NCBI RefSeq assembly: GCF_902652985.1
Contig: NC_047020.1
Coordinates: 38,316,001 to 38,380,000, forward strand
Reading direction: 5' to 3'
Length of the DNA stretch: 64,000 bases
DNA from: Pecten maximus
Taxonomy: Eukaryota
Numbering within the stretch: the first letter of the stretch is position 1; the number at the start of each line of letters is the position of its first letter. Both the position numbers and the translations under genes were made by a program. This document shows, one piece after another, positions 19,553 to 60,872 of this stretch. Below the pieces are notes generated by a model. The model saw only the letters and a list, made by a program, of their open reading frames with translations. It made no database searches and was not told the DNA's origin.

Positions 19553-21228
19553 CTAAGATTTTGGCAATAAATTCCTTTTAAGGAGTTGAACATCTGTCAA
19601 TATTTGCTTCACATTTTCTCCTAAGTGTACATGTGAACTGACCATGAAATCCCGAACTGTAGACGGTCCCCAAATATTGCTTGAAGGTCTCAAACACCCT
19701 TCATTACAACGGTAGCTGCAGCTTTGTACTTGTTCTTGTAGATTGTCGGAAGTTGTTGGTTTCTGCTTAAGTTCCTCCACTGATTTGTGATGCTTTAGTT
19801 CTGATTCTAAGTATTCTACAAGATTGCGTAGCTGTTCACTCTGATCAGTCGATTCCTTTTGCAGATCTTTAACGCTCTCTAGCGTTGTTTCTGTTGTTTT
19901 CTAGAAAATACATTAAACAACATACAACAAAATATACCTGGAAGTGTTTTATACATAATAAATATATGAGCTAACTAATTGTTTTAAGCCAGACACTTGA
20001 AATTGTATTATCGTGTACGTAGGGAGAGAAGGGACTGATATAGAAACAATGATGTCTGCAGTGTTCCGGAACTACAGTGTATGTCTAGAACCTCTATAAC
20101 ACATAGCTGACATATTCTACTCTTTAATATAGCCATGAATATAGTCAGACACATGTTTAATAAACAATTGATCACAATTTTGTCTGTGATGAGATAATTT
20201 TCCCATGTGCTACTACATCTATTCACGTTATTATATGTGTATCCTGGCCGATAATCAATGTTTGCAGTGATAACTTGATATCAGTGGTCCGGGTTGTCAG
20301 ATATCATAGAATCACCATGCATATATAATGCATATGTAGCATTTATAATAGGGTACATTTTACCTCATAACACACTAGAAAATAAAGAAAGAGCATGAAA
20401 TAAGTACCTACATGTATCTGAAATCTTGAATCCATTTTGAAGGCAAAAGGACGTAAGATCTCATTCAACCTTTTAATAACTTGTTTTTCTCACCTTGATA
20501 TCTTCATACTTTTCACATAGGCCATCCAGGATAAAGCATACGTCTGCCAAATTCTGCTTGACGTCATGGTTTGTTGTTCCTACCTGAACATTCTTGCACC
20601 TCAAAATTTTTACGTATCGAGGACTTCGCACTATATCACCAAGGATTTTAGTTACTTCATTCAATGTTTCAATAGTGTTACACTGGCTAGTTAAAACAAT
20701 ATTATCTGTCCTTAGCATTTCATCTTCTCTTCGCGAAATCTCTATTTCTCTTCTGGAGATTTCTTTTTCCCTATCTTCCAATGCACATCTTGGTACCTCA
20801 TTCGGTGCAGAGAGTGGTCCAATACCATCCTCTTCTTCTGTGTTTGTGTTGATTACCTTAGTAATCCCAGACGGCTCACTATTGCCTTCCTCGTTCAATT
20901 TATCTGAAGAATTTTCAGTCATTGTCGGAAGACAATTACGAAAATCAAAACTGTCATATTCAGGTGCCGCTAGGCTGACTGATTCCTGTTGTAGTTCGTT
21001 ATCATTTCTGCTACCTTGATCACACTCGGGAACATCAACATTGGATACTTCTTTGCTTAGATCAACACCGTTTGTTGATGAATGAGAAATCTTGTACTGT
21101 TGTGTTTTTCTTTTCTTGAAAATCTTGGTTAATCTTTGTCTTAGTGTGGAAGAATCATTTGTCTCACTCTGAGTTTTCCGAAACGCTTTCTTCCGCCGAA
21201 TATTGGATACAGATTGCCCGGAACCCAT
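19553..21228 (-). CDS. Cluster paralog A: coiled-coil plus RHIM-like motif protein; join(20494..21228,19553..19900), 360 aa from the first ATG
   Basis: Donor ATCAAG|gtgag at 20493 and acceptor tttctag|AAA at 19901, phase 0, frame preserved. High similarity to B, C and D (e.g. NTIETLNEV, LCEKYEDIK, NIWGPS). Motif YVKILRCKNVQVG. The exon opens at an acceptor at 21253, so the true N-terminus may extend upstream. Confidence 0.85.
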
Positions 21229-23164
21229 ATCAGTCTTTTTTTTTCTTTTATCCCTAAAACAGAAATACTTACAATCAATTGTTTTCTTCTAAATTCTATT
21301 CGTATGTATCGGGTACGGAATTTATTCTGAATGGATTGTACTGGTTGAAAAAAAAAACGTATAAAAAAATTATAATGTAAAGCAAAACATCCATTATTCA
21401 ATACATTTACAAATGTCCTTATTTGATCTAAAAAAACGATAAGTACAGGTATATAATCTTCACCGATATACCTCGGGGACTAAAATGATAAGTCTGTAAC
21501 TTCAAGGGATTGTAAAGAAGGCTCACACAATTTTGACCACCATTCAGTACGATTTTACATACAATCAAGTTGTACTATCTCTTGCATTGAATCAGGTTGA
21601 TCTCCAGGTTCGGAGATAAAAGATATCCTGACATTGTTCGACTTATATGTGGACGTTCTTCTGCAGATTCGACGCTTTACTTACAAGCTTCGATGTAGGA
21701 AACCTGATCCGCTACCTCACTGGGGTCATTCCTCGTATCCCAATATAAATCTCATATAGTGGTACGTATCACAATATATTTTTCCATATAGTGGTGCATA
21801 TCCTGATATAATATTCAGGTAGTGGAACATTTCTTACCTGAGGTGAATATTTCTAAAAATCCAATCAGTGTGATGATCAGCCTTTCTAGTATCCAGTACA
21901 TTAGTTGCTGCCTATGATTTATCATAGACTATATTGACAATTATCATTTACATCACGTGAGATAACTGTTTTAGATATCGTGTTATCATGCCCTGAATTA
22001 GCTATCATATTGAGATAACTTTTTACAGGTTTATCCATAGCAGAATTTATGTAACAGGTGTTAATACATTGATGACAAATACAGTTGCTGATAAACACGT
22101 TTAATAAGAGATAGCTAAATAACGTTGACTGAAAAGTTAGAAAAAATAATTTACTACTTTACATTCTGTTCAGTCCTTAGCACTTAGTGTAAAAAATGAA
22201 ACATTTAGGGTAAACTAACCAAAGATATCAAGAAGATATATCAGAGTCATTCATTATTTTTATATTAAAAATATTGTAATATTATTATGATGCAACTTGA
22301 TGTGTTGTATTTTGCCCTGACGTCAATGAATTATTGCCAGCATATGAAATCTGTCATATGTTTGTTGTGTACACGATATGTGTATAGTACACAGCCAGTG
22401 AAAGATTATAACTCACCTCTATCAATCTCAACACGATATCATTCATTCTGAAATACATTTGACGGGAATTGGTTCATTAGAGATATTTGATAAGAACTTT
22501 GTTGTATATTGTATATATTTTTGAAGTTTAGCTTACAATAATAAATTTGAAAACAAGTCTTCACATTTCCGGAATTCGTTAAAGAACAACTATGAAAGAC
22601 TCAGGAGTCGGGTTAACAATATTTTTAAATTCCGCTTAATGTCAATTTTATCCAAAACATTCAAGGGAAGATAACGATAGTTTGAGAATGCTGTTGTATG
22701 GAATACTAATAGGTTAAGTTTTGACGTGTGAATAAAACATTTGTTTGAAAAATATCTTTTGTGTGCGTCTGTTTTTTTGTGTGTGTTTTTTATATCATAC
22801 CATGAACAACGAACTGTTTTGTGTGGTTAAAAATATTTTATTACAGATAATGCTGCTTTTCGACCCCACCGCAGTCAGTTAGTATTTCATAAGATGGCGA
22901 TACACAAATTTCTATACTTAAGATTAAAAGCTTCATCAGTTCCCAAACATAAAGATATATAACGTGTAAAATATTCTGGTTATAGATATATGTAGTTATT
23001 ATCACATTAAATAGAAATTCTTCATAAATGTGTAAGAGTGACTTCCCTTTAACCTTATGTAATGACGAGTACTGGGTAGATGCTAGTATGCATCTTATCA
23101 ATGGTTAATGTATAATACAGTGTCCTTATATTGGTGATTGGACAATAAGTGGTTACACACCCTT

Positions 23165-23330
23165 GGGCGACCGGAGCTAGATTCCAGGGTCGAACGGGAA
23201 AAGGTATGGGGGACCCAGTACGCCTGTTTCCTCCCACAGTAAGACACCTTGCACACCATCCGGGTCAACAAGTGTGATTTATATAAGCTGATAATACTTG
23301 TTTTACAGTTGAAAATGAATACAGTTTATA
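23165..23330 (+). mobile_element. Degenerate V-domain SINE (second family)
   Basis: TTTCCTCCCACAGTAAGAC...CCATCCGGGTCAACAAG...ATATAAG is shared with 26489-26625. Confidence 0.55.
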
Positions 23331-58886: not shown

Positions 58887-60079
58887 TAGTTTACTAGAGT
58901 TCCCTAAAGAGATACCGTCAATATGAATGAGTTGTCAGGAAAGAGTAGATGAATAGTTGATTTTTATTCAACTTTGTCATAAAAGCTAAAATCAAAGAGG
59001 TAGTTTGTATAAACTGACATAGTGTTTAACACTGGCCGTTGATTCATGGCAAAGTAGAAAAAACGGTCTTCTTAATAAGTACTGTCAAAGGAATATAAAG
59101 CAATTTCATTTAAACTGTACCTGTACATTTGCACATATATAATTGGACGTCTGCCAAATATGACGTCACATTTATGTAAATAATCGTTGAGACAGATCAG
59201 TCATCAATAACCAAATATCACATTGATAAGAAACCGTGTACCTAGCGCATTTGTCAGACACACATATATATACATATATATTTGGTAAGTAGTCCTCTGG
59301 TTTACAATAATAATCTAGTATTATAAGATCGGTGTTTTTATATGTCAACATGATATTAATAACTCACGTGCATTACAACAACAATGATATTTTAAGTAAT
59401 ACATTATAACAACCTCGTAATGTCGGGAAATATAACTACCTACTTAATCTGATATTATACTAAATAATTTAAATACAACATTTCAAATCACAAAACATTG
59501 TCTTTTGTCTTTTTTATTTCTTCTAATATCATTAAATGAGGTCATTTTCAACAACCCATGACGTATTTTGTTTCTAAAAATAGACAAGTCTTACATCAGA
59601 CCTATATATTAGCTAAACGGGTTATTCCACCCGTGGAATTGATTTTGATATGCCATAGTTTATCGAAAATATAACGTACAGTGTATTTGATTTGATAAAT
59701 GTGTGGAAAAGCATCACAGTTTTAAAATAACAAAACATAAAACATTGACTCTACGAAGGCGCATAAAAATTATAATTACTATATAGGAGTATTGACACTA
59801 CTAACTGTATGGTATCAATAACTGCAAATCCAACTTGTAGTAAAATTACCGCCATTAAATACATTTCTATTGACCATTTAAGTGGTTGTGGGTACATGTA
59901 CATTGTGTCATGATAAAACGATAGAATACAAATTACCTGGCACTGCCTAGGTGACAAAATAGCCATAAAGCGGATTTAATTTCCTGTTTTACGGATATGT
60001 TGTGTTAAGTGTGCTATAGTTTTTAAATGTTTCTCATCCTCACTGATATGATTTTTACTCAAAGTAATGTGGTTTCCCG

Positions 60080-60338
60080 TCCTCACTGATATGAATATTC
60101 ATTGATACTCCTATCCTCACTGATATGAATATTCATTGATACTCCTATCCTCACTGATATGAATATTCATTGATACTCCTATCCTCACTGATATGAATAT
60201 TCATTGATACTCCTATCCTCACTGATATGAATATTCATTGATACTCCTATCCTCACTGATATGAATATTCATTGATACTCCTATCCTCACTGATATGAAT
60301 ATTCATTGATCCTCCTATCCTCACTGATATGAATATTT
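60080..60338. repeat. 34-bp minisatellite, about 7.5 near-perfect copies, overlapping the stop codon of gene F
   Basis: CCTCACTGATATGAATATTCATTGATACTCCTAT at 60081, 60115, 60149 ... 60319. Confidence 0.97.
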
Positions 60339-60872
60339 ATGATTGCCGTGGTTCTTCCGAGCTGTTAGACAGCGATCTATAACTTCACCAACGTGAATGC
60401 TTACAGCGCTCGCTTCATTGATAATAAAACTACTCTTGCTTTCCGAGTACCGCACACTTTGCTGTGTCTCCAGTTCTTTAATTCTCTGGTGTAAGTATTC
60501 AATTTCTTCGTCTTTTTGTTTTAGCTTGTTTTTGAGAGCTACATTTTCTTCAAGAGTGGCGCTACTAGCGACAGAATAATAGACCGAATTATTTGAGCCT
60601 TTAGAGAACTTGCTTACCACATCTTCTACACACACATCTACCTGTCGTCGATTTTTTCTTTTCAATCTCAGTTTTTTTAGAACATATGACACTATACGAC
60701 GAAGCATGTTTTTTCTTTCTTCTTCTCTGATTTCGCCGTTTTCTGCGTCTTTGTTTTTCTGCCATGCTTGTTTCACTCCAGGCCATTGTTCAACATTAGC
60801 ATCAGTGGTAGCTGTGTCGTACCTCTGTCTAGAATACGCCCGTTCACTCTGGGTCCTCCTCAAGGATGTCAT
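60321..60872 (-). CDS. Distant cluster member F: basic helix, coiled coil and degenerate RHIM-like motif; 183 aa, intronless
   Basis: First ATG at 60872 (GGCATGA). Basic helix MLRRIVSYVLKKLRLKRK, coiled coil LEENVALKNKLKQKDEEIEYLHQRIKELE, then FIINEASAVSIHVG; same domain order as E. Confidence 0.72.
   Translation of the reverse strand: MTSLRRTQSERAYSRQRYDTATTDANVEQWPGVKQAWQKNKDAENGEIREEERKNMLRRIVSYVLKKLRLKRKNRRQVDVCVEDVVSKFSKGSNNSVYYSVASSATLEENVALKNKLKQKDEEIEYLHQRIKELETQQSVRYSESKSSFIINEASAVSIHVGEVIDRCLTARKNHGNHKYSYQ

What the first reader, a model, noticed from the sequence alone, without database searches (positions are those of the whole stretch)
19553..60872. Tandem cluster of six orphan coiled-coil genes carrying a RHIM-like (amyloid-signalling) motif: candidate undescribed immune or cell-death adaptor array
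Seen: six co-oriented minus-strand ORFs with a common layout of basic N-terminal helix, disordered linker, coiled coil and short beta-type motif; A-D share the same phase-0 intron. The A-D motifs are YVKILRCKNVQVG (20578-20619), YVNISQCKSIKIG (24261-24302), YVNMAGCRDIHIG (36213-36254) and YVKMSRCQNVQVG (55654-55695). Known: these align without gaps to the RHIM of human RIPK3 (LVNIYNCSGVQVG), and RHIMs or cryptic RHIMs form functional amyloids in RIPK1/RIPK3/ZBP1/TRIF and Drosophila PGRP-LC/IMD signalling. Inference: because no kinase, death, TIR or NACHT domain is visible, these would be pure scaffolds, nucleators or decoys whose coiled coils pre-cluster RHIMs, expanded as a birth-and-death immune family.
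Basis: partly seen in the sequence, partly recalled or inferred. Interest (0 to 1): 0.9.

Follow-up and report, generated by a model that had tools for sequence, protein, structure and literature searches.

The report
Scallop-only coiled-coil gene family, RHIM-like loop
Four (not six) tandem, expressed genes found only in scallops encode long-helix proteins with a conserved 13-residue loop that looks like the amyloid-forming RHIM motif of RIPK3, but it fails the RHIM profile and its key Gln and Gly vary, so amyloid signalling is an untested minority possibility.

Summary
The window is Pecten maximus (king scallop) DNA. Genes A-D are real two-exon paralogues. RNA-run contigs show the phase-0 intron spliced out in A and B.

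Only four genes belong to the family. E and F show no detectable homology to A-D. The assembly gap at 33153-33294 lies between genes and touches no exon.

An exhaustive HMMER profile search of 1.84 billion representatives found the family only in Pectinidae (Pecten, Ylistrum, Mizuhopecten). It is tandemly arrayed there too, with pseudogene copies in Ylistrum.

No member hits Pfam RHIM or any other Pfam family. Across eight homologues the four aliphatic positions and the central Cys are invariant. The RHIM "Q" is Q, K, H or A, and the "G" is G, C or S.

AlphaFold2 models of two homologues place the motif in a 21-residue low-confidence loop, directly flanked by long heptad-patterned helices rather than by disordered sequence.

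My best reading is a scallop-restricted orphan coiled-coil family whose conserved loop is a structural or oligomerisation element. A true RHIM-type amyloid motif is about 10% likely. This scan noted the same stretch twice before (s1-784597, s1-784635).

The parts
20494..21228 (-). Gene A, coding exon 1 (245 codons). It starts MGSGQS. It holds the basic helix, the charged helix, the motif and the start of helix 2.
   Evidence: ORF. Donor GT at 20493. Spliced RNA contig joint 19900>20494, and a 5'UTR intron 21253-21836.
19553..19900 (-). Gene A, exon 2 (115 codons plus stop at 19553-19555).
   Evidence: It is 68% identical to the C exon-2 part of P0002.
20578..20616 (-). Motif A: YVKILRCKNVQVG.
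24177..25082 (-). Gene B (LOC117330180, P0001), coding exon 1 (302 codons).
   Evidence: 100% match to P0001. Spliced joint 23961>24177 in RNA contigs from two studies.
23566..23961 (-). Gene B, exon 2 with stop. The 3'UTR continues to about 22822 in RNA contigs.
24261..24299 (-). Motif B: YVNISQCKSIKIG (P0001 residues 262-274).
36129..37016 (-). Gene C (LOC117329717, P0002), coding exon 1.
35537..35881 (-). Gene C, exon 2 with stop.
36213..36251 (-). Motif C: YVNMAGCRDIHIG.
55964..56329 (-). Gene D, N-terminal coding part. It is 45% identical to residues 1-123 of the Mizuhopecten orthologue P0004. Its reading frame differs from that of the next part.
55570..55947 (-). Gene D, coiled-coil and motif part of exon 1 (second frame). 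It is 58% identical to P0004 residues 132-253.
54991..55443 (-). Gene D, exon 2 with stop. It is 42% identical to P0004 residues 262-391.
55654..55692 (-). Motif D: YVKMSRCQNVQVG.
50620..51645 (-). ORF E. An orphan gene in the same orientation. It is NOT a detectable member of the family.
   Evidence: hhalign probability 1.4%. Not found by the profile in the genome. The Atlas holds the protein but gives no usable relatives.
60321..60914 (-). ORF F. An orphan ORF in the same orientation. It is NOT a detectable member. It has a coiled coil followed by IINEASAVSIHVG, which resembles the motif in register only.
   Evidence: hhalign probability 0.1%. No homologues found. Weak BLASTP to P0006, E 0.056.
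33153..33294 (.). Assembly gap (142 N). It is intergenic, between B and C.

Best explanation
A-D are a taxonomically restricted (Pectinidae-only) family of intracellular proteins with no signal peptide or transmembrane segment.

Each protein has these parts, numbered on gene B (P0001):
- A fast-evolving, disordered, polybasic N-terminal region with one short basic amphipathic helix.
- Two long heptad-patterned helices of almost equal length (64 and 65 residues).
- A conserved 21-residue non-helical connector between them: P-x-Y-[VI]-x-[ILM]-x-x-C-x-x-[IV]-x-[IVL]-[GCS]-x-G-x-x-D.
- A Cys-containing linker with a conserved [IV]-W-G-[PR]-S segment.
- A C-terminal helix.

I infer that the connector is a structural and oligomerisation element, not a RHIM homologue. 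It would be two short amphipathic beta-strands around a Cys-bearing turn. It would sit either at the apex of an antiparallel coiled-coil hairpin (as the beta-hairpin of prefoldin subunits does) or as a looped-out break in a parallel coiled coil. There it would mediate self- or paralogue association through its aliphatic face.

On this reading the resemblance to the RIPK3 RHIM is convergent or by chance. It arises because both are aliphatic-x-aliphatic dyads six residues apart.

Shown: gene structure, expression, family limits, conservation pattern, predicted helices and loop. Inferred: hairpin geometry, oligomerisation, cellular role.
For: - Real, spliced, transcribed genes.
- Purifying selection on the helices (dN/dS 0.2-0.3), an intermediate value on the loop (about 0.5), and a near-neutral N-terminus (0.8 for B-C).
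- Only A-D match in the genome. Only Pectinidae match among 1.84e9 representative proteins.
- The cluster is conserved in Mizuhopecten (same scaffold, about 35 kb apart, same strand) and in Ylistrum (tandem copies including pseudogenes).
- AlphaFold2 of P0001 gives H195-258 (pLDDT about 90), loop 259-279 (pLDDT <50 at 264-276) and H280-344 (pLDDT about 80-88). The 24%-identical P0004 gives the same picture: H161-209, loop 210-230, H231-269.
- Heptad a/d hydrophobic occupancy is 0.56-0.63 against about 0.1 elsewhere, and the two helices are 64 and 65 residues long.
- The loop begins with a conserved Pro and ends G-x-G-x-x-D, which fit helix stop and cap signals.
- No RHIM or other Pfam hit.
- The Q and G of the tetrad vary, and every member carries charged residues inside the 13-mer.
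- The generic RHIM core pattern is expected about 31 times per 1.1e7-residue proteome by chance, or 0.6 times with the Cys added.
Against: - AlphaFold2 did not give a confident hairpin. pTM was 0.21-0.22, and structural neighbours were single long helices only.
- No prefoldin or other profile hit.
- The loop is among the most pattern-conserved segments and is predicted neither helical nor confidently folded. An amyloid motif would look the same.
- The four invariant aliphatic residues coincide with the positions most critical for RIPK1/RIPK3 nucleation.
- No functional data exist of any kind.
Confidence: 0.55

Rival explanations
1. The loop is a true RHIM-type (or cryptic-RHIM-type) amyloid-signalling motif. 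Helix-mediated clustering would bring loops together, and they would convert to a cross-beta assembly that nucleates, scaffolds or decoys an innate-immune or cell-death pathway.
For: - In A and D the motif aligns without gaps to hRIPK3 449-461. Residues 450, 452 and 456-463 of that string are confirmed in the text of 10.64898/2026.02.19.706818.
- The four invariant aliphatic positions (263, 265, 271, 273 of P0001) match the 'aliphatic tetrad' that deep mutagenesis found essential. That study found many Gly substitutions raise nucleation rather than abolish it.
- The loop is non-helical with low pLDDT in two homologues.
- The literature reports RHIM-bearing proteins in bivalves. One is the bivalve CARD-RHIM homologue of BiIV1_006R (PMC12452177). 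Another is an oyster RHIM-containing protein cited.
- Tandem expansion with pseudogenes is typical of immune families.
Against: - No PF12721 hit for any of 11 sequences.
- The genome-wide PF12721 scan gave only five sub-threshold hits, all in stop-ridden frames and none in the window.
- The tetrad Q is replaced by K, H or A (R in a pseudogene). The G is replaced by C or S.
- There are one to three charged residues inside each 13-mer. By my inference these would stack in register.
- High-confidence helices abut both ends, whereas RHIMs are flanked by unstructured sequence (PMC4262963). By my inference, helices about 10 A wide cannot follow a 4.8 A stack without linkers.
- No partner domain or second architecture carries the motif.
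- The resemblance is one evolutionary event, picked out among very many scanned windows.
Confidence: 0.1
2. The invariant Cys is the functional centre. The loop would present Cys268, together with Cys295 and the Cys-rich linker before the WGPS segment, for one of three roles: intermolecular metal binding (like the Rad50 zinc hook at a coiled-coil apex), disulfide or redox cross-linking, or S-acylation. S-acylation, with the polybasic N-terminus (and the MGxxxS start of A), would anchor the protein to membranes.
For: - Cys268 is the only invariant non-aliphatic residue of the loop (8 of 8). Cys295 is present in 7 of 8. One to four further Cys lie before the conserved WG[PR]S segment in all full-length members.
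- There are 24-29 Lys+Arg in the first 110 residues.
- Gene A starts MGSGQS, which fits the N-myristoylation consensus (my own knowledge).
Against: - There is only one invariant Cys in the loop, not a CxxC.
- No metal-binding or hook profile hit.
- AlphaFold2 shows no compact Cys cluster.
- The MG start is present in A only.
Confidence: 0.15
3. The family has no specific motif-dependent function. These would be young, rapidly evolving orphan genes, and the loop conservation would simply reflect recent common ancestry.
For: - Narrow taxonomic range.
- Near-neutral N-terminus.
- Pseudogenes in Ylistrum.
- A possible frameshift in D.
Against: - The pattern is kept between clades only 24-30% identical overall (the D/P0004/P0006 clade against the A/B/C/P0003 clade), across three genera.
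- dN/dS is well below 1 in the helices.
- The genes are transcribed and correctly spliced.
Confidence: 0.1

Closest known systems
RHIM of RIPK3/RIPK1 (Pfam PF12721)
   Same: - Aliphatic-x-aliphatic, five residues, aliphatic-x-aliphatic, then usually Gly.
- A and D even carry C-x-x-V-Q-V-G, as hRIPK3 does.
- The segment is non-helical and about 20 residues long.
   Different: - No profile score.
- Q and G are not conserved in the family.
- Charged residues lie inside the core.
- No N-x-x-[ML]-type third strand. The sequence after the Gly is acidic and enters a helix.
- Helices flank it directly instead of disordered linkers.
- No kinase, death, TIR or Z-alpha partner domain.
Arthropod cryptic RHIMs (PGRP-LC/LE, IMD, Pirk, insect STING, shrimp SRB2)
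   Same: These are loosely defined, divergent RHIM-like cores in invertebrate proteins, and the Q need not be kept (review PMC13506858).
   Different: - They lie in disordered cytoplasmic tails of receptors or adaptors with known pathway partners.
[quoted passage not shown]
- No sequence comparison could be run here.
Prefoldin subunits (helix, beta-hairpin, helix)
   Same: Two long coiled-coil helices of similar length are joined by a short beta-hairpin whose strands drive oligomerisation. This comparison rests on my own knowledge of the fold.
   Different: - No Pfam prefoldin hit.
- These proteins are three to four times longer, with large disordered regions and a third helix.
- The hairpin packing was not predicted by AlphaFold2.
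Rad50 zinc hook
   Same: A conserved Cys-bearing loop lies between two long helices of a coiled coil, and it could join molecules.
   Different: The hook is CxxC with two Cys per chain. Here there is one invariant Cys. No similarity was detected.

Membership tests
RHIM (Pfam PF12721) | Profile score at or above the curated cut-off (20 bits) | tested here: not met
   There was no PF12721 hit at E<=10 for the A-F ORFs or at E<=1 for the 11 family sequences. The genome-wide scan gave a best hit of 19.5 bits, elsewhere, in frames full of stops, and none in the window.
RHIM (Pfam PF12721) | Conserved core tetrad (I/V)-Q-(I/V/L/C)-G | tested here: not met
   The tetrad is present in A, D, the Ylistrum protein P0003 and Mizuhopecten P0005. 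It reads IKIG in B, IHIG in C, IQVC in P0004 and IALS in P0006. Q is kept in 5 of 8 and G in 6 of 8.
RHIM (Pfam PF12721) | Aliphatic tetrad with 2-6-2 spacing (hRIPK3 V450, I452, V458, V460), essential for nucleation | tested here: met
   Positions 263, 265, 271 and 273 of P0001 are aliphatic in 8 of 8 sequences. The definition comes from 10.64898/2026.02.19.706818. The pattern alone is common by chance: about 8000 are expected per proteome.
RHIM (Pfam PF12721) | Motif embedded in natively unstructured flanks | tested here: not met
   AlphaFold2 helices with pLDDT of about 76-90 end and start within a few residues of the motif in P0001. The same arrangement appears at lower confidence in P0004. 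The criterion comes from PMC4262963.
RHIM (Pfam PF12721) | Forms amyloid and mediates homotypic binding; tetrad-to-AAAA kills it | not testable with these tools
   A four-copy complex prediction of residues 255-284 returned 'no answer', which is evidence neither way.
RHIM (Pfam PF12721) | Occurs in, or signals to, proteins with immune or cell-death domains | tested here: inconclusive
   The family has no such domain. No other gene in the genome matches the family profile. No RHIM tetrad was found in ORFs at 30 CARD loci, but those loci carry only 1.5 kb flanks.
Coiled-coil proteins | Long helices with heptad a/d hydrophobic periodicity | tested here: met
   H195-258 and H280-344 have a/d occupancy of 0.56 and 0.63, against 0.09 and 0.11 elsewhere. 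AlphaFold2 predicts the helices. Structural neighbours are coiled-coil helices at Z 6-7, which is non-specific. Residues 195-235 are 61% charged, with one hydrophobic residue per heptad, so that part may be a single charged helix.
Prefoldin (PF01920 / PF02996) | Profile match, and a helix-hairpin-helix fold with packed antiparallel helices | tested here: not met
   There was no Pfam hit, and no hairpin-type structural neighbour. It is an analogy only.

The most novel reading that the evidence does not exclude
The loop is a functional amyloid-forming, RHIM-like nucleation motif set between coiled-coil helices. That would make this the first domain-less 'coiled-coil plus RHIM' adaptor or decoy family, and a lineage-specific amyloid-signalling system in molluscs. 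Paralogue-specific changes at the exposed positions (Q/K/H/A) would then tune which members co-assemble.
Probability: 0.1. Interest if true: 0.75.

Novelty: new member of a known kind. Interest (0 to 1): 0.35.

Why it matters
If the loop really formed signalling amyloid, it would extend RHIM-type signalling to molluscs in a new architecture: helices instead of disordered linkers, and no enzymatic or death-fold domain. It would also give a small, tractable family for asking how coiled coils gate amyloid nucleation.

As it stands, the value is more modest. This is a clean example of a scallop-restricted, tandemly evolving orphan gene family with one sharply patterned loop. It is also a caution: the aliphatic 2-6-2 pattern plus Q-x-G recurs by chance about 30 times per proteome, so a look-alike of a short motif is weak evidence without profile or experimental support.

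Tried and rejected
- Pfam on all ORFs and on all 11 family sequences gave no RHIM and nothing over a cut-off. Only sub-threshold coiled-coil noise appeared.
- The PF12721 scan of the whole genome gave five sub-threshold hits, all in frames full of stops, so they are chance matches. 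An attempt to list weaker candidates failed because the E-value ceiling is 10.
- PDB sequence searches with the motif region and with the family profile found nothing. The best hits were ArsR repressors and augmin at E 0.2-1.
- ESM Atlas searches for B and E gave no usable relatives.
- Word-index homologue searches returned only the window's own proteins and the Ylistrum protein P0003, and nothing for F.
- Foldseek against the PDB gave no match. VIA-align gave only generic single long helices at Z<=6.9.
- Complex prediction on four copies of P0001 255-284 returned 'no answer' (score 0.02). It is not evidence either way.
- A search for bona fide scallop RHIMs next to CARD exons covered 30 loci and found no tetrad in any ORF of 80 or more residues, apart from one junk match.
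- A literature search for the LOC identifiers found no papers.
- I did not build a RHIM profile of my own, because that would have required typing reference sequences from memory.
- Spliced models were handled exon by exon, or through the database proteins P0001 and P0002.
- D was not read through its frame change.

Full report
**Source and observation.** The protein of ORF B is 100% identical to the NCBI entry 'uncharacterized protein LOC117330180 [Pecten maximus]' (P0001, 433 aa). C corresponds to LOC117329717 (P0002). The window is therefore king-scallop chromosome sequence (G000:C6:38316001-38380000). A regular-expression scan of all six frames finds the pattern in coding context only at those four places.

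**Gene models.**
- A, B, C and D each end their first coding exon at a conserved ...[IV]-K codon followed by GT. They resume at an AG in phase 0.
- Contigs from RNA runs carry the spliced joints 19900>20494 (gene A) and 23961>24177 (gene B, in two studies). They also show a 5'UTR intron of A, 21253-21836. The genes are therefore transcribed and spliced as modelled.
- The Mizuhopecten orthologue of D has its intron at the same codon.
- D has a problem. Its N-terminal part (55964-56329, 45% identical to P0004 residues 1-123) and its coiled-coil part (55570-55947, 58% identical to P0004 residues 132-253) lie in different frames. The change falls in an A-rich run. I cannot tell whether this is an assembly indel, a real frameshift or an unusually short intron, and I did not read it through.
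- The 142-N gap at 33153-33294 lies between C and B, outside every exon. It could hide sequence, but it does not affect any model.

**How many members.**
- A profile of A-D searched over the whole 918-Mb genome in six frames returns only the exons of A, B, C and D.
- E (50620-51645) and F (60321-60914) are co-oriented orphan ORFs with helical segments. hhalign gives them 1.4% and 0.1% probability against the family profile. BLASTP gives nothing better than E 0.06.
- F does have a coiled coil followed by I-I-N-E-A-S-A-V-S-I-H-V-G in the same register. That is a resemblance, not demonstrated homology.
- The cluster therefore has four members, not six.

**Taxonomic range and dynamics.**
- An exhaustive HMMER profile search of 1.84 billion representative proteins found five proteins at E<=0.001. 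Besides the window's own there are one from Ylistrum balloti (P0003) and three from Mizuhopecten yessoensis (P0004, P0005, P0006). All are Pectinidae.
- In Mizuhopecten two of the genes lie about 35 kb apart on one scaffold, in the same orientation.
- In Ylistrum the 21-kb locus around P0003 holds three further copies with in-frame stops or missing parts.
- The birth-and-death picture is therefore supported.

**Selection.** Nei-Gojobori estimates were made exon by exon, on small samples.

| Region | dN/dS |
|---|---|
| N-terminal 194 residues (B vs C) | about 0.8 |
| Helices | 0.2-0.3 |
| 21-residue loop | about 0.5 |

The loop's scaffold positions are fixed while the positions between them change quickly.

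**Anatomy.**
- AlphaFold2 on P0001, with the 11-row family alignment, gives:
  - a short helix at 76-93, the conserved basic amphipathic segment;
  - disorder to residue 194;
  - helix 195-258 (pLDDT about 90);
  - a non-helical stretch 259-279, with pLDDT under 50 at 264-276;
  - helix 280-344 (pLDDT about 80-88);
  - disorder at 345-382;
  - helix 383-432.
- The 24%-identical Mizuhopecten P0004 gives the same order: helix 161-209, loop 210-230, helix 231-269.
- The two helices around the loop are 64 and 65 residues long. They have heptad a/d hydrophobic occupancy of 0.56 and 0.63, against about 0.1 at other positions.
- Residues 195-235 are 61% charged, with one hydrophobic residue per heptad. 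That part may be a single charged helix rather than a true coiled coil.
- Across eight sequences the loop reads P-x-Y-[VI]-x-[ILM]-x-x-C-x-x-[IV]-x-[IVL]-[GCS]-x-G-x-x-D. The four aliphatic positions and the Cys are invariant. Tyr and Asp are kept in 7 of 8, and Pro, Gly274 and Gly276 in 6 of 8.

**Is it a RHIM? Against.**
- No member hits Pfam PF12721 at permissive thresholds, nor any other family over its cut-off.
- A genome-wide PF12721 scan gives only five sub-threshold hits, in frames full of stops and none in the window.
- The core tetrad is VQVG (A, D), VQIG or IQIG (P0003, P0005), IKIG (B), IHIG (C), IQVC (P0004) and IALS (P0006). It is VRIG in a Ylistrum pseudogene.
- Each 13-mer holds one to three charged residues. 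By my inference these would stack on themselves in a parallel in-register amyloid.
- Confident helices abut both ends of the loop, whereas RHIMs and HET-s motifs are flanked by unstructured sequence (PMC4262963). By my inference, helices cannot follow a 4.8 A repeat without linkers.
- The generic pattern [VIY]-x-[IVLM]-x5-[IV]-Q-[IVLC]-G is expected about 31 times in a proteome of 1.1e7 residues, or 0.6 times if the Cys is required. The four copies here are one ancestral event.

**Is it a RHIM? In favour.**
- A deep-mutagenesis preprint shows that nucleation of RIPK1 and RIPK3 depends above all on an 'aliphatic tetrad' (hRIPK3 V450, I452, V458, V460). Many substitutions of the flanking glycines raise nucleation rather than abolish it (10.64898/2026.02.19.706818).
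- Those four positions have exactly the 2-6-2 spacing of the four invariant aliphatic residues here.
- Bivalves are reported to have RHIM-bearing proteins. One is the CARD-RHIM homologue of an iridovirus gene (PMC12452177). Another is an oyster RHIM-containing protein cited.
- PGRP-type RHIMs and IMD, however, are reported absent from molluscs (PMC9835746).
- I could not find a scallop partner. ORFs at 30 CARD loci carry no RHIM tetrad.

**What I think it is.** The same aliphatic dyad pattern fits a beta-hairpin as well as an amyloid beta-arch. Three features point to a structural connector:
- the Pro at the start;
- the G-x-G-x-x-D at the end;
- the two equal-length heptad helices.

Such a connector would sit either at the apex of an antiparallel coiled-coil hairpin (as in prefoldin subunits) or as a looped-out break. 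It would use its aliphatic face, and possibly the invariant Cys, for self- or paralogue association.

AlphaFold2 gave no confident packing (pTM 0.21-0.22), and structure searches returned only generic long helices. The hairpin is therefore inference. A four-copy complex prediction of the loop returned 'no answer' and counts for nothing.

My probabilities are:

| Reading | Probability |
|---|---|
| Structural or oligomerisation loop in an orphan coiled-coil family | about 0.55 |
| Cys-centred metal, redox or acylation site | about 0.15 |
| RHIM-type amyloid | about 0.10 |
| No specific motif function | about 0.10 |

An immune or cell-death role has no evidence for or against. The RNA runs that hold the transcripts are coded, so tissue and condition are unknown.

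**Verdict.** The family is uncharacterised, restricted to scallops, and annotated only as 'uncharacterized LOC'. Interest is moderate.

Noticed in passing
window 21228-21211 (minus strand, start of gene A): Gene A alone starts M-G-S-G-Q-S, which fits the N-myristoylation consensus (Gly2, Ser6). B and C start MA[DE]S. Together with the polybasic N-terminus this hints at membrane association for A.
   Followed up: no
window 55925-55960 (minus strand, gene D): A frame change in an A-rich run separates D's N-terminal part from its coiled-coil part. The Mizuhopecten orthologue P0004 reads straight through the equivalent region. The cause could be an assembly indel, a real frameshift or a 43-nt GT..AG mini-intron.
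   Followed up: partly
window 13146-13541: A tandem repeat of a 54-bp unit, 7.3 copies, 90% matches. It gives repetitive ORFs on both strands and is probably a minisatellite.
   Followed up: partly
window 62221-62408: A second assembly gap (188 N), outside the finding's genes.
   Followed up: yes
window 31760-32032 and 32221-32463 (+): Two near-identical ORF fragments, both starting MTQAAIVIDVINNRMTSHHRV, lie about 460 bp apart. This is a local direct duplication or repeat element.
   Followed up: no
window 40109-40387 (+) and 40890-41186 (-): Two ORFs on opposite strands share a similar peptide (…NKHRPTFRTWQLPQVSFELATRG… and …KNHRPTVSTRQLPNAGFELVARG…). They look like inverted copies of a repeat element.
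   Followed up: no
L015 13508-16692 (Ylistrum balloti): Retrotransposon genes (RVT_1, rve, Integrase_H2C2) lie inside the Ylistrum tandem array, between family copies. They are a possible driver of the duplications and pseudogenes.
   Followed up: no
L014 10001-11068 (Mizuhopecten P0005 gene): P0005 holds two copies of the charged E-[IL]-S-R-R-E-D-E helix segment. Its gene model is short (189 aa) and may be truncated or mis-annotated.
   Followed up: no
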